Of a DNA stretch of 64,000 bases, positions 6,490-61,853 are shown one piece after another. Numbering within the stretch: the stretch's first letter is position 1; every line of letters starts with the position of its first letter. The position numbers and the translations under genes are program-made. The DNA is taken from the NCBI RefSeq assembly GCF_001194135.2, contig NC_068985.1, forward strand, positions 98,065,835 through 98,129,834, given 5' to 3'. A model generated the notes under the pieces. It made no database searches and was not told the origin of the DNA. It saw only the letters and a program-made list of their open reading frames with translations. This stretch comes from Octopus bimaculoides. Lineage: Eukaryota.

Positions 6490-6857
6490 GTTTCAGTCAT
6501 TTGACTGTGGCCATGCTGGGACACCACCTTTAGTCGAGCAAATCGACCTCAGAGCTTATTCTTTGTAAGCCTAGTACTTATTCTATCAGTCTCTTTTGCC
6601 GAGCCGCTAAGTCACAGACGTAAATGCACCAGCATCGGTTGTCAAGCGATGTTGGGGGGACAAACACAGTCACACAAACGTGTGCACACACACACACGCA
6701 CATATATATATGATGGGCTTTTTCCAGTTTCTATCTACCAAATCCACTCAAGGCTTTGGTTGGCTCGAGGCTATAGTAGAAGACACTTGCCCTAAGTTCC
6801 ACACAGTGGGACTGAACCCGGAACCATGTAGTTGGTAAGCAAGCTACTTATCACACA
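6490..6857 (-). mobile_element. SINE family A, near full length
   Basis: Reverse complement of the 9018-9382 copy, with internal (CA)/(TA) microsatellite. Confidence 0.8.
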
Positions 6858-8323: not shown

Positions 8324-9017
8324 ATATATATATTGCAATATTGTTTCTTGTTTTTATACAGGAATTCTGTCATACTTTTATTTTTTCTTCCTTTCTTTGT
8401 CTTCCTTTCTCTTCTTCTCTCTCTTTGCCTCCCCTTGCTCCTCTCTCTGTTCTATCTTCTCCCTCTCCTCTTTCCTTTTCCTTCTACTTTCTATCTAGAC
8501 CTATCCCTCACTGCCCTTTCTCTCTCTCTCCCCCTCTCTCTCTCTCTCCCCCTCTCTCTCNNNNNNNNNNNNNNNNNNNNNNNNNNNNNNNNNNNNNNNN
8601 NNTCTCTCCCCCTCTCTCTCTCTCTCCCCCTCTCTCTAAAACTGTGTCTCTTTGTCTCACACTCTAGCACCATCTCTGCTCTGGCTCTAACCCTTTGCTC
8701 TCAGATATCTATCCACTCTTTGCCACTCCTATACATCTTCATTGATGTTGGCCACAAAGAACTACAATACAAAGAACTGTTAATGTTCTACCACCATATT
8801 GGTCTATTAAGCAGAAACAGCAGCAGCAGTATTTTATAAAAGAAATATTCCAATTATTTTCTGTTGGAAGAACAAATTTCTTTGATAAGAAATGAAATTG
8901 TTTTCTTTTATATTTATAGTGAAATCTATTTTATTATAAAGGTGTAAATGACTACCATTCTTAGTGCTAAGAAAACATTATGGAACAGAAATAGTGTATT
9001 CTAAGAGTTTTTTTTTT

Positions 9018-9382
9018 GGCTGTGTGGTAAGTAGCTTGCTTACCAACCACATGGTTCCAGGTTCAGACCCACTGCTTTGCACCTTGGGCAAGTGTCTTCT
9101 ACTATAGCCTTGGGCCGACCAAAGCCTTGTGAGTGGATTTGGTAGACGGAAACTGAAAGAAGCCCGTCGTATATATGTATATATATATATATATGTGTGT
9201 GTGTATATGTTTGTGTGTCTGTGTTTGTCCCCCCACCATTGCTTGACAACCGATGGTGGTATGTTTACGTCCCCGTAGAATAAGTACTAGGCTTCCAAAG
9301 AATAAGTCCTGGGGTTGATTTGCTTGACTAAAGGCGGTGCTCCAGCATGGCCGCAGTCAAATGACTGAAACAAGTAAAAGAG
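9018..9382 (+). mobile_element. SINE family A (tRNA-like head, ccttgggcaag central domain, internal (TA)n(TG)n, gtaaaaga tail)
   Basis: Head ggctgtgtggtaagtagc...ggttcagaccc is Pol III A/B-box-like; more than 10 related copies in the window. Confidence 0.85.
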
Positions 9383-10138
9383 TATATATGTAGTGTGGTA
9401 AGTAGCTTGCTTCCCAACCACATGGTTTCAGGTTCAGTCCCACTGTGTGGCACCTTGGGCAAGTGTAATTGTGAAGGAAACTTTTTTTTTTTTTCAACCA
9501 TGCCTAGAGAATATAATAAAACAGGAGTATCAGAGAGAATAACTTGATTCTTTATAGCAGGGTTCCACGAGAGAGCGCCAGGGGTACCATGAGAAGTCAC
9601 TAGGGGTTTCATGAGGAATAGTGATAAATAAACTAATTATATGCAAATGTATTTTTGAATGATTTTTGTGTTTAATTTTATATTTGTAAATATATTATAC
9701 ATGCATGACATATTCCCTCATCTAGTGAAAGCCTAGCATTTGTGGGTGGTACGACTACCTTATGGGAAAAGTGACTTTTTATTAGAAAATTGGAAAGGAA
9801 TTTGATCTAAGCAAGGTCTTGGTTAGCATGAAATTTCTTAAATATCCTTTATGGCTTCTGATGGATTTGGCATTAGGAAACATTTCAAAGACAGGTTCGT
9901 GATACGTTATATGTCTTATGAAATTGAACTTTATGAATGGAAAAGAAAAATTATTAAATAGATGAATGATAGTATAGGCCTGGTTATGCTGTTTGTATGT
10001 GTTGTGGGTATGTGCTGCTTGCTTTGCAATCATGTGGCTTGGAGTTCAGTCCTGTTGCAACGGCCCCATTAGCAGTGTCTTCTAAGGGTTGACCAAAGCT
10101 TTGTGATGGGATTTGGTTGACAGAAGCAGAAAGCTTGT

Positions 10139-12351: not shown

Positions 12352-12411
<60 letters not shown>

Positions 12412-12585
12412 CATACATATATACGATGGGCTTCTTTCAGTTTCTGTCTACCAAATCCACTCACAAGGCTTTGGTTGGCCTGAGGCTATAGTAGAAGACA
12501 CTTGTCCAAGATGCCACGCAGTGGGACTGAACCCGGAAACATGTGGTTGGTAAGCAAGCTACTTACTACACAGCCACTCCTGCGT
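12005..12585 (-). mobile_element. SINE family A, interrupted by gap 12125-12316
   Basis: Reverse complement of family A head and tail on either side of the gap. Confidence 0.8.
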
Positions 12586-21574: not shown

Positions 21575-21872
21575 CAGGGCTGGTCAACCTGAGGCCCACG
21601 AGCTACATGTGACTCACTTGATATTTTCTTGAAGTATTGTGTTTAATTTCAAAATAAAATTATTTGTATATGACATTTGTTTCAAAATAAATCTTAAATT
21701 CATAAGTGGCAATAACGCAATAGCCTACAATTTTATAATTTTAAACAAACACAAAGTAAGAAAAATTATTGATGCTGTAATTTGACTATTAATACATAAA
21801 GTATACAAGTGGCCCTCAAAAACTTTCTATGATTAAAGTGTCCCACAATGTAATTTGAATTGGCCAGGCCTG
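21575..21872. mobile_element. hAT-type MITE, copy 1
   Basis: Termini cagggctgg / ccaggcctg; 8-bp TSD ctttacac / ctctacac (1 mismatch). Confidence 0.8.
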
Positions 21873-22230
21873 CTCTACACCATCTACAAGTCACAGAAGG
21901 GAGCAGTAATTCTAGTAGGGGAAGAAATTCCCAAAAGCTGATACAATTGTGGTACTTCAATCTTGTCAGACAACTCCTCTCATGTATGTGAAACAATAAA
22001 ATATACTCAGTCCATACTGTAAAGTGGTTTGTGATAGGAAGGGCGTTTTGCTGTAAAAATGTGCCAAAAGCAGGAGTCAGGTCACTGAAAACTAATCCTA
22101 ATATTCATAGTATGTTAGTGCTGCTATAGTTCTCTTGACCATAAAAGAGAAGTTGAAGACTATCCATCTACGAAAACTCCTGCATGCTGATGGTTTAGTT
22201 GTCATAGGTGTATCTATCAAAGGATTAGAG

Positions 22231-22551
22231 CAGGCCTGGCCAACTGGAATTACATTATGGGCCACTTTAATCACAGAAGTTTTTTGAGGGCTGCTTGTAT
22301 ATTTTATGTACTAATAGTCAAATAATCAAATTACAGAATCAAGAATTTTTCATACTTTTCATTTGTTATAAAATTGTAGGTTATTGCTTTATTGCCACTT
22401 TTAAATTTTAAATTTATTTTGAAACAAATGTCTTGTGCAAACAATTTTATTTTGAAATTAAACACAATACTTCAAGAAAGTATCAAGCGGGCTGCAAGAT
22501 AAAAGTCTGCAGGCCACGTGCGACCCGTGGACCTGAGGTTGGTCAGCTCTG
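22231..22551. mobile_element. hAT-type MITE, copy 2, inverted relative to copy 1
   Basis: Reverse-complement similarity to 21575-21872 along its length; own TSD gattagag / gattagcg. Confidence 0.8.
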
Positions 22552-29085: not shown

Positions 29086-29361
29086 CTCATTAAAGACCTG
29101 TTTACTGATCTGTAAAATATGTCATGTATCATTCCACAGTATAGGAGGTGGGGTTTTACTATATAGTCTCTTGATTTGTTAATAATAGCAGCCAAATTTC
29201 CCTCCTATCATCCTCAACCATTTTAAGAAAAATAGACCTACATTCTGGATAATATAGTCTTGTATGCATTATTGTGCCTTAAATTAAGGCAGGGTAATCA
29301 CTTTAGGAGTGTCTTTGAGTATAGAAATACACAAAGGTCACCTGTACTTTTCGAATTTACA

Positions 29362-29853
29362 TCTCTCTCTCTCTCTCATTATATATCTCTCCTTCTATCT
29401 TTCTCTTCCCTACATCTCTCCCTCTCTTTCTTTGCCTCTCTTTTTCTCTGCCTCTTTTGTTCCATGCCTCCCTTTGTATCTCCCTATCTCTCTCTCTGTA
29501 TCTCCCCATTTCTCCCTCTCTCTCCCTCCCTCCCTCCGTCTCTCTCTTTCTCTCTCTCTCTCTCCTCCCTCCNNNNNNNNNNNNNNNNNNNNNNNNNNNN
29601 NNNNNNNNNNNNNNNNNNNNNNNNNNNNNNNNNNNNNNNNNNNNNNNNNNNNNNNNNNNNNNNNNNNNNNNNNNNNNNNNNNNNNNNNNNNNNNNNNNNN
29701 NNNNNNNNNNNNNNNNNNNNNNNNNNNNNNNNNNNNNNNNNNNNNNNNNNNNNNNNNNNNNNNNNNNNNNNNNNNNNNNNNNNNNNNNNNNNNNNNNNNN
29801 NNNNNNNNNNNNNNNNNNNNNNNNNNNNNNNNNNNNNNNNNNNNNNNNNNNNN

Positions 29854-29897
<44 letters not shown>

Positions 29898-30128
29898 CTA
29901 TCTCCGTTGCTCTTTTACTCTTTCTCACTTTTTCAGTCTCTCTCTCTCTCTGTCTGTCTCTCTCTTACTATCTCCGTTGCTCTCTTACTCTCTCTCTCAC
30001 TCATTCAGTCCCTAACTCTCTCTCTGTCTCTCTCTCTCTCTCTCTGCCTGTCTCTCTCTGTCTCTCTCTGTCTTTCTCTCTCTCTCTCTGTGTCTCTCAC
30101 TCTCTCTCTGTGTCTCTCACTCTCTCTC

Positions 30129-30160
<32 letters not shown>

Positions 30161-30495
30161 CGTCTCTCTCTCTCTCTGTCTGTATGTGTGTCTCTCTCTC
30201 TATGTCCCTCTCTCTGTCTCTCTCTCCCCATCTCTCTTTCTGTATCTCCCCCATCTCTTTCTTTCTCTGTATCTCTCTCTTTGTATTTCTCTTTCTCTCT
30301 CTTTGTATTTCTCTTTCTCTCTCTTTGTATTTCTCTTTCTCTCTCTGTCTCCCCCTCTCTCTCTTCTTTTCTTTTTCTCTCTCTCTGTCTCCCCCTCTCT
30401 CTCTTCTTTTCTTTTTCTCTCTCTCTTCTTTTCTTTTCTCTCTCTCGCCCTTTTCTTTCTCCTCTCCCTCCCTCTCTCACCCCCCTCTTCTCTTC
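29362..30495. repeat. Long compound (CT)n / pyrimidine-rich tract with gap 29573-29853
   Basis: Read directly; source of the Ser/Leu and Arg/Glu ORFs. Confidence 0.95.
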
Positions 30496-31125
30496 TATGA
30501 GAAGCTAATCAGTTCTTAATTTTCACTGTAGGATCTCAATCTAATATCATTTCTCACAATCACCTCACAATCACCTCACCTCTCCACACAAATACAATGT
30601 TTGCACTAACACACTCACAGTAACAGACATACCTACTCACTCATTCTCTCTCTCTCTCTCTCTCTCAAACACACACACACCAACCATAATTAAGACAGAA
30701 GTGACAAGCTGCTCTACTTTCTTCCCTTATGGCAGCAGGCCAAACTTTAACCGTTCTTTATCTATTCTAGTCTTCAATGTCTCTCTGCTTTCCCACCATC
30801 AAGCCTTCCTACATCATCATTGTTCTCTTTCCTATCTACATCATTTATTCTTTGCAATTCTTCACCCGTGACCCTCCGGCATATTTACCTCCCCACCACC
30901 ATAATGTTTCTACTCCAGTTTTGCCATTCTAAAGCAAGTATCAAATTATTAAATATAGCCACCCGCTTCACCCACCTTTAACTCTTTCCATACCAACCAG
31001 CCTGAGACCTAACCATACTTAAGTGTTCGTATTTTAATTAAAATCTCAATCAAAATCTCATAACATGAAAATTCATTTGGTTAACCTCAACATAGAAATC
31101 ATTATTAAATGGACATTTGAAAAGA

Positions 31126-33352: not shown

Positions 33353-33379
33353 TTTTTATTATTATTATCCTTTCTATTA

Positions 33380-33586
33380 AAAGTACAAGGCCTGAAATTT
33401 TGTGGGAGGGGACTAGTTGATTACATCAACCCTCCAGTTTTTCACTTATACTTTATTTATTGACCCTGAAAGAATGAAAGATAAAGTTAACCTTGGCAGA
33501 ATTTGAACTCAGAGCATAAAGATGAGTGAAATGCTGCCAAGCATTTTTCCTTGCATGATAACTACTCTGCCAGCTCTTCGCCTTAA
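33380..33586 (-). mobile_element. SINE family B, tail type 2, next to (TAA)n/(TTA)n
   Basis: Reverse complement of the 54074-54290 copy; lies about 100 bp upstream of visible exon 1. Confidence 0.7.
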
Positions 33587-47484: not shown

Positions 47485-47880
47485 AAGGTGACAAGCTAGC
47501 AGAAATGTTAGCACACCAAGCGAAATGCTTAGCAATATCTTGTCTGTCTTTACATTCTGAGTTCAAATACTGCCGAAGTCGACTTTGCTTTTCATCCTTT
47601 CGGGGTCGATAAATTAAGTACCAGTTGTGTACTGGGGTTGATCTAATCGACTAGTCCCCTCCCCCAAAATTTCAGGCCTTGTGCCTACAGTAGAAAAGAA
47701 ATGCTTAGTGGTATTTTGTCTGTCTTTATGTTCTGAGTTCAAATTCTGCTGAGGTCAACTTTGCCTTTCATCCTTTCAGGGTCGATAAATTAAGTACCAG
47801 TTGCATACTGGGGTTGATATAATCGACTGGTCCCACTCCCCTGAAAATTTTGGGCCTTGTGCATAGAGTAGAAAAGATTA
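47485..47880 (+). mobile_element. Head-to-tail dimer of SINE family B (tail type 2)
   Basis: Full copy to about 47700, then a 5'-truncated copy starting gaaatgcttagtggtattttg. Confidence 0.8.
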
Positions 47881-52980: not shown

Positions 52981-54073
52981 GAAGGACATTGACTAATATA
53001 AGTGCTAATATGTGACAGAAAAGGTCAACAGACCTACTGACAGGATACAAATCACAATTACAATGGCAGGAAAAATGCTTTATAATATTTAATTTGGTAA
53101 GAGAGAATTGAAGGCACTCTATAGAGTAGTCAGAAATGTGATCGTTTGGCAAGCAATATGTATATATTGTTTGTATCTGTCAGTGGGCTTGTTGCTCTTT
53201 TAAGTCTCAAATTCATGTTTAGAAGGTTTGTCCTTCTATTTCATCTCTTGTTTTCAAATACACACACGCACAAGTAAATGGACAGATGTTAATTCTATGA
53301 ACATCATCCTTCTCTTTTAAAATTTTACTCATGTAACTTACAGAAAAGAAAATAAAGAATTATGTTCAGTTATTTCATGGCGTCTGCTGTAATACGATAG
53401 TTGTTTCTCTGTGAAGTGCTTTTGCAAAATATTTTCATTTCTGCACAGAGCCATTTCCTTTCATTCATATCAATAATGTATTTGATAATGGCATGAATAT
53501 TAAAAGAAGGTGACACCCCTGCCCTGTTCTCCTCTCAAAAATTAAAAACTTTACGTTTTAGTGACAACTAACTTGTTTGTGCTTGCATGAAATGATCTTT
53601 ATTCACCGAATTGCTTAAAATAAATTTGCTTAAGATAAATTTTACTTAAAATAGATTTCCTTAAAAACAAATCTACTATGAATTAATTTATAAAATAAAA
53701 CAAAACAAAACAAACTGATCAATGAAAAACTTTTATATTCATGTTGTGAAATTAAGAGAATTTTTAATTGAAAATTATATAAGAAATAAAAACAAGAACA
53801 TATATGAATATAGAATTTGAATAAAACAGATTTAGCTTGGTATATTTATATACTTAGGTTTGATAAGTTATTTATCTATGTATTCATATGTTTTAAGAAC
53901 AAGTTACATTTTAATTTTTTATTTTTGGCTCTACCATGTTTAATATTCTACCATGTTTAATATCTCTTCCTATCCTTCTGTAGTTGATAAAATTTAGCAC
54001 AAGTTAAATATTGGAGTTAGTTTCAACTAATTATTCCTGTTAAGGAATGTGGCCTAGTGATTACAATGTTGCA

Positions 54074-54290
54074 AAGGCAGCAAGCTAGCAGAAACATTAG
54101 CACGCTGAGCGAAATGCTTAGCGGTATTTCGTCTGTTTTTACGTTCTGAGTTCAAATTCCGCCGAGGTCAGCTTTGCCTTTTATCCTTTCGGGGTCGATG
54201 AATTAAGTATCAGTTGCTTACTGGGGTTGATCTAATCGACTGGTCCCCTCCCTCAAATTTTCAGACCTTGTGCCTTGAGTAGAAAAGATT
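54074..54290 (+). mobile_element. SINE family B, tail type 2, with probable TSD
   Basis: gattacaatgttgca (54059-54073) versus gattaagatgttgca (54287-54301), 13/15 match. Confidence 0.8.
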
Positions 54291-55046: not shown

Positions 55047-55139
55047 AAATACAATGCTGCTCTCTCTGCTATTGTCCGTGCCAACAGTACTTTAAGTGAG
55101 GCACTATACATGGCTTCACCCTACAACATGGGTAGTAAG
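55047..55139 (+). CDS. tty: tweety homolog, visible exon 8/11
   Basis: Acceptor gtttccttctag, donor AAG|gttagt; 93 nt, phase 0 to 0. KYNAALSAIVRANSTLSEALYMASPYNMGSK; NST sequon. Less conserved, so support is mainly splice signals and phase. Confidence 0.8.
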
Positions 55140-55177
55140 GTTAGTTTTTATTTTCTTATCTTACGTCTTGTACTTTG

Positions 55178-56036: not shown

Positions 56037-56178
56037 AGAAAGTATCCTAATCTTCAGTTTTCAGCTTTGAGATACCATATTTACTGGGATCATCATGTTT
56101 CAGTATGATGTATGCAATAAACTTACACTCCCATTTCTAAGTCTGTTCTAATCCCTATATTACTAATTATTTTTGCAG

Positions 56179-56318
56179 TTACGCAGCCTTGTTCGAAAGA
56201 TCCGTTTAGAAGTGACCGCAGCAGTTTCCAATGTTTCCCTCCTCAATCAAATTTCCGGCTGTTCTTTTATCCACAACAATTACATCAATGCACTTAATGG
56301 AATTTGTCATCAAAGCCT
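56179..56318 (+). CDS. tty: tweety homolog, visible exon 9/11
   Basis: Acceptor atttttgcag, donor CT|gtgagt; 140 nt. LRSLVRKIRLEVTAAVSNVSLLNQISGCSFIHNNYINALNGICHQS(L) matches tweety CxxxHxxYxxALxGxC. Confidence 0.93.
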
Positions 56319-56600
56319 GTGAGTAACTTTTTTTATTTCTTCTACCAATATTTTTTTATCTACTTTTATATATGGCTTAATCATAAAACAAAGGGTAGTG
56401 CTGATGAGCTCATGATTTTAGTAGGGTCTTCAAGACAAGTGTGTGTGTGGGAGTTGAGCCTTGATTTATTGATTGTTGCAGTCTGTATCAGTTCATCAAG
56501 TTATTCCCAGATTTAAGGGCTGATTTAAATGCTTGTAACAAAGGTATCTCTGCTAAAGCCAGGTGGTGCTGTCCAAACAAGTGATGTATTTGAATATATA

Positions 56601-56998
56601 GGTGCAGGAGTGGTTGTGTCGTAAGTAGCTTGCTTACCAACTACATGGTTCCGGGTTCATTGCCACTGCATGTCACCTTGGGCAAGTATCTTCTACTATT
56701 GCCTGAGGGTGACCAAAGCCTTGTGAGTGGATTTGGTAGACAGAAACTGAAAGAAGCCTGTTATATATATATATTTTTGTGTGTGTGTGTGTGTGTGTAA
56801 ACGTTTGTGTGTCTGTGCTTGACAACCGATGCTGGTGTGTTTACGTCCCCGTAACTTAGCGTTTCGGCAAAAAGAGACCGATAAAATAAGTACTAGGCTT
56901 ACAAAGAAAAAGTCCTGGGGTTGATTTGCTCGACTAAAGGCGGTGCTCCAGCATGGCTGCAATCAAATGACTGAAACAAGTAAAAGAGTAAAAGAGCA
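56601..56998 (+). mobile_element. SINE family A, near full length
   Basis: Head, body, microsatellite and tail as in 9018-9382. Confidence 0.85.
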
Positions 56999-57704: not shown

Positions 57705-57806
57705 GATTGGAGTGGCTTTCATGAGTCTTGTATGTGGTATTGTAGGAGTTGCACTGACCATTAACATCTGTTTGGCCACAAGGGCTTCAATCTTATTTGC
57801 AAAGAG
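57705..57806 (+). CDS. tty: tweety homolog, visible exon 10/11 (TM5)
   Basis: Acceptor ttgtttttccag, donor AG|gtctgt; 102 nt, phase 2 to 2. IGVAFMSLVCGIVGVALTINICLATRASILFAK is a hydrophobic helix. Confidence 0.88.
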
Positions 57807-58165
57807 GTCTGTATGATACATAATTTAATTAATGTATTTAAATAAATTTTACCTGAAATTGTCTGGCTTGTGTTTATGCTTCAGTGAATGGATGGGTCGA
57901 TGGATAATGGATATATATATAGATATATATATATATATATATATATATATTCTATGTGAATTTATCCCATGTGCATCTTTTTTCCTGGCTCTTTTTTCAT
58001 CATCTCTCTCTTCTTCTCTTCCCAGTTTCTCTTGGACATTTCTCTATTATCTGAAGAAGGACTGTGTCTGAAATGCAATACACCCTTTATTTCCATTTTT
58101 CCCTTCAATGTCAAAACTAATAACTGTGAATGTCTCTTGTACTTTTTTCTTTGTTGTCTTTTCTT

Positions 58166-58194
<29 letters not shown>

Positions 58195-58196
<2 letters not shown>

Positions 58197-58358
58197 GGCG
58201 TAGGAGTGGCTGTGTGATAAGTAGCCTGCTTACGAACCACATGGTTCCGGGTTCAGTCCCACTGCGTGGCACCTTGGGCAAGTGTCTTCTACTATAGCCT
58301 CGGGCCGACCAAAGCCTTGTGAGTGGATTTGGTAGATGGAAACTGAAAGAAGCCCGTC

Positions 58359-58407
<49 letters not shown>

Positions 58408-58622
58408 GTATGTATGTGTGTGTGTCCCCCCCCCCCAACATAGCTTGACAACTGATGCTGGTGTGTTTTTACATCCCCGTAACTTAGCAGTTCGGCAAAA
58501 GAGACCGATAGAATAAGTACTAGGCATGCAAAGAATAAGTCCTGGGGTCGATTTGCTCGACTAAAGGCGCTGCTCCAGCATGGCCGCAGTCAAATAACTG
58601 AAACGAGTAAAATAGTAAAGAG
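58195..58622 (+). mobile_element. SINE family A, full length with long (TA)n
   Basis: Starts ataggcgtaggagtggctgtg; ends gagtaaaatagtaaagag. Confidence 0.85.
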
Positions 58623-59054
58623 ATATTGGAAAGAATGAAGGTGATAACTGATCTCTGGATGCTGGGTTTTAGTCCTGAAAGGGTTAACAAGGAAGTGAGG
58701 CATTGTGGTGGTACAGTCCTGCTGAATCTACACCAGCTTGGGAAAGTGAAAGTGAATAGATAGCGTGTGCACGCACACACACTTTGCATGTGTCTTTGGT
58801 CAAGGTACATAACTCTGCTGTTCTAGTTTGCTTAACCATAAAACAATTGGTGTATCTTTTTGTATTAAAAAAAAATCCATCACATGCTTTGATAGATGGA
58901 AATAAAACATATACTACTAGAATGTGTATAGATTTTTGCACGTATGTGTATGAATTTTTCTATGTGTGTGTTTGTGTATACACACATAGCAAAGTATACA
59001 CACAAAGCTAGTTGTAAAATCTCAATAAGAGATGAAAGTAGTAACTATACTAAC

Positions 59055-59632
59055 AAGTAAAGTTAATTGCAGCATCAATATGGTTGTTTAATGTTACTAC
59101 TGTTTTAATTCCAGGCAGATCTTCTGCCAGCTGTTTTATAGGTGCAGCCTGCACCCTGTATATATTATAAGCAGGGGAGCTAATACCTACCACTCTCCAG
59201 CAGATGATGGGATTGCAAGACTGACTTGGTTTTGAGCTAGTTTTGTTCATCCTCAGTTGTAAACACTTGATTGCTAGAGAAATGGCCAGAGTCTGCTACA
59301 GCAAGCAATATATAGAAAGCAAAGCAACCATCGGTCACTGTGCAAATCAGTGACCGATGGCCACTCTGTTTTCTATTTATTGCTTGCGGGAGCCGACTCT
59401 GGCTATCTCTCTCGCAACAGGTGTTCATGAAAGGAAGATGAGTAAAACTAGCTCGAAACAGAGTCGGTCTTGTGATTTCATTGTCTGCTGGAGGGTGGTA
59501 TGTGTCTGCTCCCCTGCTTGCAATATATATGGGGTGCAGGCTACACTTATAACCAGCTGGTAGAAGATCTGCCTGGGGTTAAAACAATAGTAACATTGAA
59601 CAGCCATATTGATGTGGCAATTAACTTTACTT
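59055..59632. repeat. 578-bp foldback inverted repeat (about 285-bp arms, 7-nt loop)
   Basis: Centre ccatcggtcactg-tgcaaat-cagtgaccgatgg (59328-59360); arms pair out to aagtaaagttaattgc / gcaattaactttactt. Confidence 0.92.
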
Positions 59633-61006
59633 CCTTCTATCCATCTATGTTTGTAGATTTGTATGTATGTCTACGTATTGTGTGTTTGTATTTACCATTT
59701 ATTTTGGAATTGAATTAAACTTATTAAAAACCTGAAACCAATTATGTAATTTCTAACTATTTCTTCATTTATTTGTTCATTGATTTTGTAATTAAAAATT
59801 TAATCTTTTTTAATAATAATATAATTTATAATAAACTTCAATCTTCATGTAAGCAGAAGAATATTACTGTAAAATTACAGTAATTAACGAAAATTTATTT
59901 TATAAATAGATATGATTACTGTAGTTTGGACCATTAACCTCATTTCTGCCTCAACCCATACAAGGATTTTAAAATGATGGTGATGATGATGAAGTTATTT
60001 AAGCTCTCATTAATTATATTTCGAACAGAAATAGTTAATGCATGTGTTTTAACACATAAAGCACGATGGGCCACGATCGTGTCCCAGATAGATGCATTTA
60101 ATTTATGAGTGTTTGTTGGGGTCTAATATCACTCAAACGCTCTGATACCCCACCCCAGAATGCAAGAGGACTAATAGTTCAACTAATGACCTTTCAGATG
60201 ACGTAAGACTTGCCACCATTATATACTAAGAAGATATTTTAACTCTTTTTTGTTTTTTACGTGTGCATGGTAGTCTTATTTTCATAAGATGTGCTCAGCA
60301 GTCCATGCTATGTAAGTGCAAATTCCGACGCTTTATGAGTTAATTAATTTTCCAAATAAAGTATCTGTAGTAACTAAATTAAGAAAAAAAAAAAATGCTT
60401 CTTATTGCTTAGTCCTAGATGAGTTATGGTTGAGCAGACTTATGATCAAAAGCTTTCTGGGCTTGATCATCTTGTCTGTTTTGTTTATCAGGAATAATGT
60501 GTTTTGGACCACATTTTGTTTTTGTTTTAAAGATGTAGATTTGGTTGCTACTTCTAGCAAATCTTTCAGCTACGTAAACCTTAGTAGTATATTAAGTTGC
60601 TGGCATTTGTTGTTGCTTAGCTCCAGATTAACTCTAATTGAGCAGATCTATATATATATATATATATTCATCATCATTTATTGTCCACTTTTCTGTGCTT
60701 GCATGGGTTGAATGGAAGTTATTGAGGCAGATTTTGTATGGTTGGAAGCTCTTCCTATCACCAACCATCACCAAATAGACGTGTCTCATATCTATTTTCT
60801 CTTGAATATTATATCACTGATGGCACATTTAGTCCATTTGTTAAGGGTTTTATATTTCCAATAAATATAACAGGCTACTCATAAAAGTAGAGGTGCTAAT
60901 CATTGTTGTTGATGAACTCCAGGTAATCTCTCACTGAACACCTCTATGGTCAAAAAGGTATTCCAACTTTGACTGCCCCCTTCAGTTTTCAAAAATACTC
61001 TAAGAC

Positions 61007-61853
61007 TTCACTTGGGATGCTGATTTTTCTGCCAATTGACTAAAGAACATCAAACTATTCAACTCTTCACTAATATATAATCTCTTGAACCAGTAACTGA
61101 TATGCACTATAAGTATATTGTCTTACATTCTATGTAATAATGTGTTGTGTTGCATTTAAAAAGATTAAAAAAAAGGTTTATTTTAGAGCCATAATGATTT
61201 ACACTTTATATGTCTTTATCTCTTTCTCTGTCTACATAAAACAATGTGTCTTTATGTTGTTGACTAACCCCATTTTAGTCCTGATCAAGCAGATCTATGG
61301 TCACAGGTACACAACACATTACCATTTCATTTTGTTTTTCTTCGAGGCATAAGACTTCATTATCTAATATTTACTTCTTTTAAATTCATTTTTCACTCCA
61401 TTATTTTTACAGCATTCTTTTTATAATATTTCATATTTGTTTTTTTATTTCAGTTTGGTATACTATCCTGTAGATGACACCGATCCATTCTTACCCAGGC
61501 CACCTCCCTACAGCTACGGCACCCTCCCAACGGCTCCGAATGATCCTTTCCAAGTGGACGTACGCAGAAGTTACTTGTAAGTAGATACGACAGCAACCAC
61601 CACAACAACAGTCCTGTCTGTGGATTTGTTAGTTGCTTCTGACAGTTGATTTCACTTGGGATGATGACTTTCTCTGCCAATTGACTTAAAGAACATCAAT
61701 CAAGCTATTCAATTCTTTACTCTTTGCTAATATCTCTAGAACCATTATCTGTTATACACTATAAATATATTGTTCTATATTCTATATAATAATGTTATCT
61801 GTGTTGTGTTTCAAAAGAAAGGAAAATGGTTTATATTAGAACCACAATGATTT
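61007..61853 (+). repeat. Diverged direct repeat, about 200 bp (61007-61200 and 61651-61853), flanking visible exon 11
   Basis: Both start ttcacttgggatg and run colinearly to aatgattt. Confidence 0.8.
61454..61580 (+). CDS. tty: tweety homolog, visible exon 11/11 (cytoplasmic tail; ends at stop 61578-61580 or splices after 61576)
   Basis: Acceptor ttttttatttcag, phase 2. (S)LVYYPVDDTDPFLPRPPPYSYGTLPTAPNDPFQVDVRRSYL* has the tweety DDxDPF motif. The 3' boundary is ambiguous. Confidence 0.85.

What the first reader, a model, noticed from the sequence alone, without database searches (positions are those of the whole stretch)
59055..59632. 578-bp intronic foldback hairpin in the tweety pre-mRNA
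Two ~285-bp arms, roughly 80% complementary by eye, meet at a perfect 13-bp stem with a 7-nt loop. I see no TSD, no coding capacity and no other copy in the window. It lies in the intron between the TM5 exon and the tail exon, so it is transcribed. It is either a foldback/Mutator-like MITE or a local inverted duplication. The RNA would be a long duplex, a candidate ADAR hyper-editing, endo-siRNA or splicing-control structure. Many arm differences are transitions, some of which would retain G:U pairing.
Basis: partly seen in the sequence, partly recalled or inferred. Interest (0 to 1): 0.7.

Follow-up and report, generated by a model that had tools for sequence, protein, structure and literature searches.

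The report
Old foldback repeat in tweety intron
A real 578-base self-complementary repeat sits in an intron of a cephalopod tweety-channel gene, but every test run here suggests an ordinary, neutrally decaying foldback repeat, not a conserved regulatory RNA.

Summary
Window 59055-59632 is a whole-length palindrome: arms of 286 and 285 nt, 82% complementary, with a perfect 13-bp apical stem and a 7-nt loop. The sense RNA folds at -408 kcal/mol (z = -34). It lies in an intron of a + strand tweety-family gene, between the TM5 exon (57705-57806) and a PY-motif exon (61454-61576), which is not the last exon.

Nothing marks it as selected. The arm differences look like neutral decay: 38 transitions to 12 transversions, against 310:125 in local SINE-like repeats, and similar age. 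The excess of sense-strand G:U-compatible differences (27:11) is only marginally above the local strand-bias background. That background is 0.55 from SINE copies and 0.56 from 14 other foldbacks (one-sided p about 0.03-0.05). The orthologous intron of the cuttlefish Acanthosepion pharaonis has neither the sequence nor any long hairpin. No complementarity to the flanking exons was found.

Foldbacks are common in cephalopod tweety introns. The window has a second one, and 120 kb of cuttlefish locus has 15, including a multi-copy family.

No flush target-site duplication was found, and genome copy number could not be tested. Transposon insertion versus one-off inverted duplication therefore stays open. 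I lean towards a transposon (about 55:30). Interest is low.

The parts
59055..59340 (.). Left arm of the foldback (286 nt)
   Evidence: Aligns to the reverse complement of 59348-59632 at 82.4%. Only one CpG is left (o/e 0.08).
59341..59347 (.). Apical loop TGCAAAT (7 nt)
   Evidence: Read from the sequence. Unpaired in both MFE folds.
59348..59632 (.). Right arm of the foldback (285 nt)
   Evidence: Retains 6 CpGs (o/e 0.42).
59328..59360 (.). Perfect 13-bp apical stem plus loop
   Evidence: CCATCGGTCACTG and its exact complement. A 13-bp perfect run is expected about 8% of the time at 82% identity, so it is not special.
57705..57806 (+). Tweety TM5 exon (AG acceptor 57703-4, GT donor 57807-8)
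   Evidence: Splice signals read. 74% identical to cuttlefish TTYH residues 228-269. Aligns to TM5 of human TTYH1 7p5j.
57807..61453 (+). Intron (3647 nt) that holds the hairpin. The hairpin starts 1248 nt after the 5' splice site and ends 1821 nt before the 3' splice site.
   Evidence: Exon mapping.
61454..61576 (+). PY-motif exon (…YYPVDDTDPFLPRPPPYSYG…RRSYL), followed by a GTAAGT donor. It is not the last exon.
   Evidence: for the sequence; about 96% identical to the cuttlefish exon 53059-53184; the cuttlefish protein continues with SESAAGSEDT…
59042..59051 (.). Offset direct repeat: TAACTATACT in the left flank against TAACTTTACT at 59622-59631, which is inside the end of the right arm
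   Evidence: The same or better occurs in 3.3% of random position pairs. Weak; recorded only as a possible trace of origin.
58944..58981 (.). TG/TA-rich low-complexity flank, similar to 59657-59695 on the other side of the hairpin
   Evidence: Local alignment score 29 against a background mean of 19 and 95th percentile of 25. The hairpin (43% G+C) forms an island within AT/TG-rich sequence.

Best explanation
It is a genuine, old, whole-length palindromic ('foldback') repeat in an intron of a coleoid cephalopod tweety-homologue gene. Most likely it entered as one unit, as a non-autonomous foldback or MITE-type DNA element, and split a TG/TA-rich low-complexity tract. Its two arms have since decayed independently by about 10% each, at the neutral rate and with the neutral spectrum of this locus. 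It is transcribed only as a passenger of the tweety pre-mRNA. There the sense strand would fold into an imperfect duplex of about 285 bp: 260 pairs, 28 of them G:U, with the longest uninterrupted helices 40, 33 and 28 bp. That makes it one of many ordinary intronic dsRNA substrates for promiscuous ADAR editing, removed with the intron. Shown here: the structure, its intronic sense-strand location, the neutral-like divergence, the lack of deep conservation, and the abundance of similar structures. Inferred: origin by transposition, transcription, and editing.
For: Structure and significance. Gene context and strand: the Pfam Tweety model scores 39.8 bits against a cutoff of 31.8 on collinear + strand exon pieces; PDB TTYH1/2/3 hits; the only database homologue is TTYH of Acanthosepion pharaonis at 79% identity; the exon maps are collinear. 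Neutral-like decay: ts:tv is 38:12 against 310:125 in 26 SINE-like copies of the same window; per-arm K2P is 0.104 against 8.7% SINE divergence from consensus; TG-versus-CA dinucleotide differences show CpG decay. This pattern also argues against an assembly artefact. The G:U bias of 27:11 compares with background fractions of 0.55 (SINEs) and 0.56 (14 other foldbacks, 79:62), and with a window-wide + strand TG>CA skew of 4688:4063. The resulting p is 0.034-0.05 one-sided. There is no conservation: no blastn or nhmmer match anywhere in 120 kb of the cuttlefish locus, and no long hairpin in the orthologous 5.6-kb intron. Foldbacks are commonplace: a second one lies at window 21617-22487, and the cuttlefish locus has 15 with arms of at least 80 nt, including a whole-length palindromic family with at least 7 full copies in 120 kb. 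For insertion as a unit: both boundaries are sharp, the arms are of equal length, the 43% G+C island sits between similar TG/TA-rich flanks, and TIR and MITE families are annotated in octopus genomes (PMC13282606). For a generic ADAR substrate: the hairpin meets the dsRNA criterion used for metazoan editomes including octopus, namely a reverse-complement match of at least 80% over at least 50 nt (PMC9989829).
Against: There is no flush target-site duplication of any length from 2 to 12 bp. There is no second copy in the other 63 kb of the window, which only bounds copy number below roughly 10^5 per genome. The arms have no tandem subrepeats. The termini (AAGTAAAGTTAATTGC…) resemble no superfamily motif that I can name. 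Genome-wide copy number, the defining test for a transposon, could not be run: protein-space and DNA-pattern searches of the available collections returned nothing. A residual sense-strand G:U excess (0.71 against 0.55) is not fully explained.
Confidence: 0.55

Rival explanations
1. One-off local inverted duplication. A break or stalled fork in the intron led the 3' end to fold back on a short native inverted repeat and copy about 285 nt of its own strand. This made a palindrome with a 7-nt loop that is single-copy in the genome and has since decayed neutrally.
For: No flush TSD. No other copy in the window or in any searchable collection. A very short spacer and arms of exactly matching extent. 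An offset 10-nt direct repeat links the left flank to the end of the right arm, which could be a junction trace.
Against: Both boundaries are compositional breaks into similar TG/TA-rich sequence. An in-situ duplication should leave one arm continuous with its native flank. The direct repeat has about a 3% chance expectation. Multi-copy whole-length palindromic elements demonstrably exist in a cephalopod tweety locus, which raises the prior for a transposon.
Confidence: 0.3
2. A selected regulatory dsRNA. The hairpin would be maintained because its sense-strand duplex does something: an ADAR hyper-editing or ADAR-recruiting element, an endo-siRNA (hpRNA-like) precursor, or a modulator of splicing of the last tweety exons.
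For: The sense strand folds 50 kcal/mol better than the antisense. Of 38 transition differences, 27 keep a G:U pair on the sense strand, which is nominally above background (p about 0.03-0.05). All 8 inferred CpG decays are C>T on the sense strand.
Against: The same strand bias is present in unrelated SINE copies (0.55), in 14 other foldbacks (0.56, some individually more extreme, e.g. 10:1 and 10:3), and in window-wide TG>CA counts. It is absent from the cuttlefish orthologous intron. There is no complementarity to flanking exons above chance. There is no Rfam family; the best hit is a generic mir-549-like 33 bits against a gathering score of 93. The arms have no homology to any coding gene that could be an siRNA target. 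It lies more than 1.2 kb from either splice site.
Confidence: 0.07
3. Assembly artefact: a chimeric or fold-back read assembled into a false palindrome in a gapped draft assembly.
For: The window is a draft with 2225 N. Palindromic artefacts are known from some library types (general knowledge).
Against: The arms differ at 18% of sites, with a transition-rich, CpG-decay spectrum equal to that of genomic repeats nearby. An artefact would give near-identical arms. There are no N runs next to it.
Confidence: 0.02

Closest known systems
Whole-length palindromic MITEs and foldback-type non-autonomous DNA transposons (e.g. human Made1, the source of mir-548, PMC1784062; Foldback-like elements such as Tetris, PMC4079207, and Tm1, PMC3169594)
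   Same: Sub-kilobase, non-coding, arms complementary over the whole length, short central spacer, intronic location, hairpin-forming transcript.
   Different: No TSD. No demonstrated second copy. No tandem subrepeats in the arms, unlike classical FB elements. Termini match no named superfamily. At 578 bp it is much longer than Made1 (80 bp).
The multi-copy foldback family found here in the Acanthosepion pharaonis TTYH locus (L001: 31297-31744, 83231-83705, 88683-89109, 99982-100421, 105632-106046, 106488-106931, 107615-108192)
   Same: Same gene family's introns, same host clade, similar size (430-580 bp), whole-length self-complementarity of 77-91%, similar degree of decay.
   Different: No detectable sequence similarity to the window's hairpin. 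The cuttlefish family is clearly multi-copy and has repeated sub-terminal units. The window element is single in the 64 kb available.
Inverted repeat pairs as promiscuous ADAR substrates (inverted Alu pairs in primates; 'evolutionarily young repeats' across metazoans including Octopus bimaculoides, PMC9989829)
   Same: Intramolecular dsRNA of at least 50 nt at at least 80% identity within a transcribed intron. It would work the same way: hyper-editing of a long imperfect duplex.
   Different: Here the two arms are one contiguous foldback with a 7-nt loop, not two separate insertions hundreds of bases apart. Editing itself was not observed.
Drosophila hpRNA (hairpin endo-siRNA) loci (general knowledge: Okamura et al. 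2008, Czech et al. 2008)
   Same: Long inverted repeat with arms of a few hundred bp and a short loop.
   Different: hpRNAs are their own transcription units whose arms derive from, and target, a protein-coding gene. No such homology was found here, and no small-RNA data were available.

Membership tests
MITE / non-autonomous TIR DNA transposon | Small (<~800 bp), non-coding | tested here: met
   578 bp. ORFs are at most 72 aa and have no homologues.
MITE / non-autonomous TIR DNA transposon | Terminal inverted repeats | tested here: met
   The outermost 16 nt are perfectly complementary, and the arms pair along their whole length.
MITE / non-autonomous TIR DNA transposon | Target-site duplication flanking the TIRs | tested here: not met
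   No flush direct repeat of 2-12 bp. Only an offset 10-mer with 1 mismatch, at about 3% chance. Decay at about 10% per site could hide a short TSD but not an 8-10 bp one entirely.
MITE / non-autonomous TIR DNA transposon | Multiple dispersed copies in the genome | not testable with these tools
   No cephalopod genome of the source species is searchable. There is a single copy in 64 kb. There were 0 hits in metagenome, prokaryote-genome and viral collections and in protein space.
Foldback (FB) elements in the strict sense | Long inverted arms built of tandem subrepeats | tested here: not met
   TRF finds no tandem array inside 59055-59632. The direct-repeat scan finds none either.
Mutator-like (MULE) derived foldback | 9-11 bp TSD with long TIRs | tested here: not met
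   Long TIRs are present, but there is no flush 9-11 bp TSD.
ADAR hyper-editing substrate | Long intramolecular dsRNA in a transcribed region (at least 50 nt, at least 80% identity; criterion of PMC9989829) | tested here: met
   285-nt arms at 82%. The sense MFE structure has 260 pairs with helices up to 40 bp. It lies in an intron on the gene's sense strand.
ADAR hyper-editing substrate | Clustered A-to-G RNA-DNA differences | not testable with these tools
   No RNA-seq data were available.
hpRNA / endo-siRNA locus | Arms homologous to a target gene | tested here: not met
   The six-frame translation found no homologue in 5.8 billion proteins. phmmer against 1.84 billion representatives gave only spurious hits to repeat proteins.
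hpRNA / endo-siRNA locus | Dicer-sized small RNAs from both arms | not testable with these tools
   No small-RNA data were available.
Conserved intronic regulatory structure | Presence at the orthologous position in other lineages | tested here: not met
   The cuttlefish orthologous intron (L001 47416-53058) has no sequence match and no long hairpin. Closer relatives were not testable.
Editing-site complementary sequence (ECS) for a nearby exon | Extended complementarity to an exon | tested here: not met
   The longest exon-hairpin complementarity is 9 nt. Duplex energies fall within the range for shuffled sequence.

The most novel reading that the evidence does not exclude
The hairpin is a lineage-specific, selected dsRNA element of the tweety pre-mRNA. 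On this reading, substitutions that keep sense-strand pairing (G:U) have been preferentially retained (27:11; all 8 inferred CpG decays on the sense strand), because the duplex recruits or titrates ADAR, or feeds an endo-siRNA pathway in neural tissue.
Probability: 0.06. Interest if true: 0.6.

Novelty: new member of a known kind. Interest (0 to 1): 0.2.

Why it matters
As it stands it matters little. It is one more decayed foldback repeat in a repeat-rich cephalopod intron, and a routine source of intronic dsRNA. The work does yield a usable control: sense-strand G:U-compatible arm differences cannot be read as evidence of RNA-level selection here. The locus has a background strand asymmetry of about 0.55-0.56 in the same direction, seen in SINE copies, in other foldbacks and in TG>CA counts. 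If future RNA data showed heavy editing or small RNAs specific to this hairpin, it would become a convenient single-locus model for how cephalopod ADARs handle long cis duplexes.

Tried and rejected
1. Pfam scans of long concatenations of + strand ORFs found no Tweety signal. Short exon pieces scanned alone or joined did. A tblastn with a human TTYH1 sequence written from memory served only as a lead to those exons.
2. The search for homologous proteins on a spliced TM5+PY peptide found nothing. A longer exon concatenate found the cuttlefish TTYH.
3. Attempts to find other copies of the element through ORFs all failed. These were a six-frame concatenate, exact ORF look-ups and a full phmmer of the 113-aa stop-free frame. 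The last gave only two weak hits that sum 25-37% matches over tandem repeats in long proteins, and I rejected them as spurious.
4. Exact DNA-pattern scans with arm-conserved motifs in metagenome, prokaryotic-genome and viral collections gave 0 hits. These collections are not expected to hold cephalopod DNA, so the result says nothing about copy number.
5. Rfam gave only sub-threshold generic miRNA-hairpin hits. ARAGORN found no tRNA-like SINE head.
6. TSD readings were considered and rejected. A TA reading needs 3 extra complementary bases by chance and the termini are not Tc1/mariner-like. A TTAA reading would need 8 extra complementary bases outside the TSD. A TWA reading has the wrong orientation.
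7. A paralogous 'empty site' search with the joined flanks found only microsatellite matches.
8. The supplement of the Octopus vulgaris repeat-annotation paper holds no TE library.
9. Two short sub-palindromes inside each arm (GGCAGA-TCT-TCTGCC and GGTGCA-GCC-TGCACC) were read by eye. At a hand-estimated Poisson p of about 0.07 (not computed) they are not significant.

Full report
**Observation.** The repeat finder reports three collinear inverted-repeat blocks that together span the interval. A global alignment of 59055-59340 with the reverse complement of 59348-59632 gives 234 matches, 50 mismatches and 3 gap columns, or 82.4%. The centre is a perfect 13-bp stem (CCATCGGTCACTG) around a 7-nt loop, TGCAAAT, at 59341-59347. 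As RNA, the + strand folds into one long hairpin of 260 pairs at -408.3 kcal/mol, against -163 +/- 7 for dinucleotide shuffles (z = -34). The - strand reaches -358.7 (z = -31). With 300-nt flanks added, 259 of 260 pairs are kept. The longest uninterrupted helices are 40, 33, 28, 23 and 21 bp. blastn and nhmmer find no other copy in the window, and TRF finds no tandem subrepeats in the arms.

**Context.** The window is gapped eukaryotic draft sequence rich in microsatellites and SINE-like repeats. Collinear + strand exon pieces are as follows.
- 37.6 kb: GFYGNEETN
- 51.3 kb: DFGDLCVNPDNYV
- 57.7 kb: a TM helix
- 61.5 kb: DDTDPFLPRPPPYSYG

Joined, these score 39.8 bits on Pfam Tweety against a cutoff of 31.8, and they hit the solved human TTYH1/2/3 structures. 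The only homologue in the 5.8-billion-protein collection is TTYH of the cuttlefish Acanthosepion pharaonis, at 79% identity, so a coleoid cephalopod origin is supported. Mapping that protein onto the window and onto its own 120-kb locus L001 gives these window exons: 55047-55142, 56176-56319, 57705-57806 (TM5; AG acceptor and GT donor read) and 61454-61576 (PY-motif exon). The last of these ends in a GTAAGT donor, and the cuttlefish protein continues through two further exons, so it is not the terminal exon. The hairpin therefore lies in a 3647-nt intron on the sense strand, 1248 nt from the 5' splice site and 1821 nt from the 3' splice site.

**Is it under selection? Substitution pattern.** Counted exactly, there are 38 transitions and 12 transversions. 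Of the transitions, 27 give G:U on the sense strand and 11 on the antisense strand, which explains the 50 kcal/mol advantage of the sense fold. Several differences are TG-versus-CA dinucleotides, the signature of CpG decay.

I built two local controls.
- Control 1 used 26 copies of two SINE-like families in the same window, compared with their consensus. They give 310 transitions and 125 transversions. After normalising for composition, the ratio of (C>T + A>G) to (G>A + T>C) on the window's + strand is 1.23, an expected fraction of 0.55. The + strand also carries TG>CA generally: 4688 against 4063 in the window, and 236 against 169 in this intron outside the hairpin.
- Control 2 used fourteen other foldbacks in sense-transcribed tweety introns, one in the window and thirteen in the cuttlefish locus. 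Pooled, they give 79:62, or 0.56, and individual cases are as extreme as 10:1 and 10:3.

Against 0.55-0.57 the finding's 27 of 38 has a one-sided p of 0.034-0.05. That is unremarkable as one of fifteen. The transition:transversion ratio (3.2 against 2.5) and the per-arm distance (K2P 0.104 against 8.7% SINE divergence from consensus) match the neutral repeats. The same spectrum rules out an assembly artefact, which would give near-identical arms.

**Is it under selection? Conservation and other tests.**
- The cuttlefish orthologous intron (L001 47416-53058) and the whole 120-kb locus contain no blastn or nhmmer match to the hairpin.
- That intron holds only TA microsatellites and one 41-nt inverted repeat.
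- There is no exon-hairpin complementarity above chance.
- No Rfam family is matched. The apex scores 33 bits on mir-549 against a gathering score of 93, which is a generic hairpin match.
- No frame of the element has a protein homologue, so nothing suggests an hpRNA derived from a target gene.

**How common are such structures?**
- The window has a second, unrelated foldback at 21617-21877 / 22226-22487, with 261-nt arms, about 84-89% complementarity depending on how gaps are counted, and a 348-nt spacer.
- The window also has many inverted SINE pairs within 4 kb of each other.
- The cuttlefish locus has 15 inverted repeats with arms of at least 80 nt within 600 nt.
- Several of these belong to one whole-length palindromic family of about 430-580 bp. 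It has at least seven full copies in 120 kb and repeated sub-terminal units.

Foldback elements are thus a normal component of cephalopod tweety introns. Octopus repeat annotations list TIR, Mutator and MITE families (PMC13282606).

**Origin.** Two readings remain.

For insertion as a unit (a foldback or MITE-type element):
- Both boundaries are sharp.
- The arms are equal in length.
- The hairpin is a 43% G+C island between similar TG/TA-rich flanks (alignment score 29 against a 95th percentile of 25).
- Multi-copy foldbacks are shown to exist in this clade.

Against it:
- There is no flush TSD of 2-12 bp.
- There is no second copy in 64 kb.
- The termini match no superfamily that I can name.

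An offset direct repeat, TAACTATACT at 59042-59051 against TAACTTTACT at 59622-59631, could be a junction trace of an in-situ fold-back duplication. It arises by chance in 3.3% of random position pairs. Genome copy number would settle the matter, but it could not be obtained. ORF-based and DNA-pattern searches of every available collection returned nothing, and those collections do not hold the source genome. I put transposon origin at about 0.55, in-situ duplication at about 0.30, selected function at about 0.07 and artefact at about 0.02.

**Mechanism.** The element is transcribed passively with the intron (inferred) and folds into a long imperfect duplex (computed). By the criterion used for metazoan editomes, including Octopus bimaculoides (reverse-complement match of at least 80% over at least 50 nt; PMC9989829), it is a plausible promiscuous ADAR substrate, like inverted repeat pairs elsewhere. 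It is then discarded with the intron. No step of editing, dicing or splicing control has been shown.

**Verdict.** This is an ordinary member of a known kind, and interest is low.

Noticed in passing
window 21617-21877 and 22226-22487: A second, unrelated long inverted repeat: 261-nt arms, about 84-89% complementary depending on how gaps are counted, with a 348-nt spacer. It has no flush TSD and is single in the window. Its arm differences are symmetric between strands (9:9).
   Followed up: partly
window, e.g. 9017-9384, 56611-56990, 58207-58617 (+), 6490-6857 (-); and 47485-47699, 54072-54288 (+), 2328-2503, 33368-33584 (-): Two SINE-like repeat families: A is about 390 bp with 15 copies or fragments, and B is about 200 bp with 11. 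Many copies lie as inverted pairs within 4 kb (e.g. 9017-9228 against 12365-12576, 87%), so this pre-mRNA has many other potential dsRNA regions.
   Followed up: partly
window-wide; intron 57807-61453: Strand asymmetry on the gene's sense strand. TG exceeds CA (4688 against 4063 after masking; 236 against 169 in this intron). C>T and A>G substitutions exceed their complements by about 1.2-fold in repeat copies. This is consistent with transcription-associated mutational asymmetry.
   Followed up: yes
window 61454-61582: The PY-motif exon ends in a consensus GTAAGT donor at 61577, whose read-through would give an immediate TAA stop. The cuttlefish orthologue splices on to two more exons (SESAAGSEDT…, …YADWFHRERMSASNKVG). 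Their counterparts were not found in the remaining 2.4 kb of the window.
   Followed up: partly
L001 31297-31744, 83231-83705, 88683-89109, 99982-100421, 105632-106046, 106488-106931, 107615-108192: A multi-copy whole-length palindromic (foldback) element family in the Acanthosepion pharaonis TTYH locus. It has shared extended termini (…CAGTATCTGTCTATATTTCTGAGATGAGGTATTATGTACACTATTTAC…) and tandem partial units (e.g. 83743-83914). Its TSDs and superfamily were not determined.
   Followed up: partly
P0001 residues 1-133 (cuttlefish TTYH annotation): The N-terminal ~130 residues of the deposited cuttlefish protein are SLSLSPLSL… low complexity, apparently a translated CT-rich microsatellite and not tweety sequence. 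The gene model is probably wrong or truncated at its 5' end.
   Followed up: no
window 59042-59054 and 59622-59634: TAACTATACTAAC in the left flank resembles TAACTTTACTTCC, which spans the right end of the hairpin. About 3% chance expectation. It may be a junction trace or a coincidence.
   Followed up: yes
window 29300-30520: A very long CT/AG-rich microsatellite tract interrupted by an N gap. It produces 350-400-codon artefactual ORFs on both strands.
   Followed up: no
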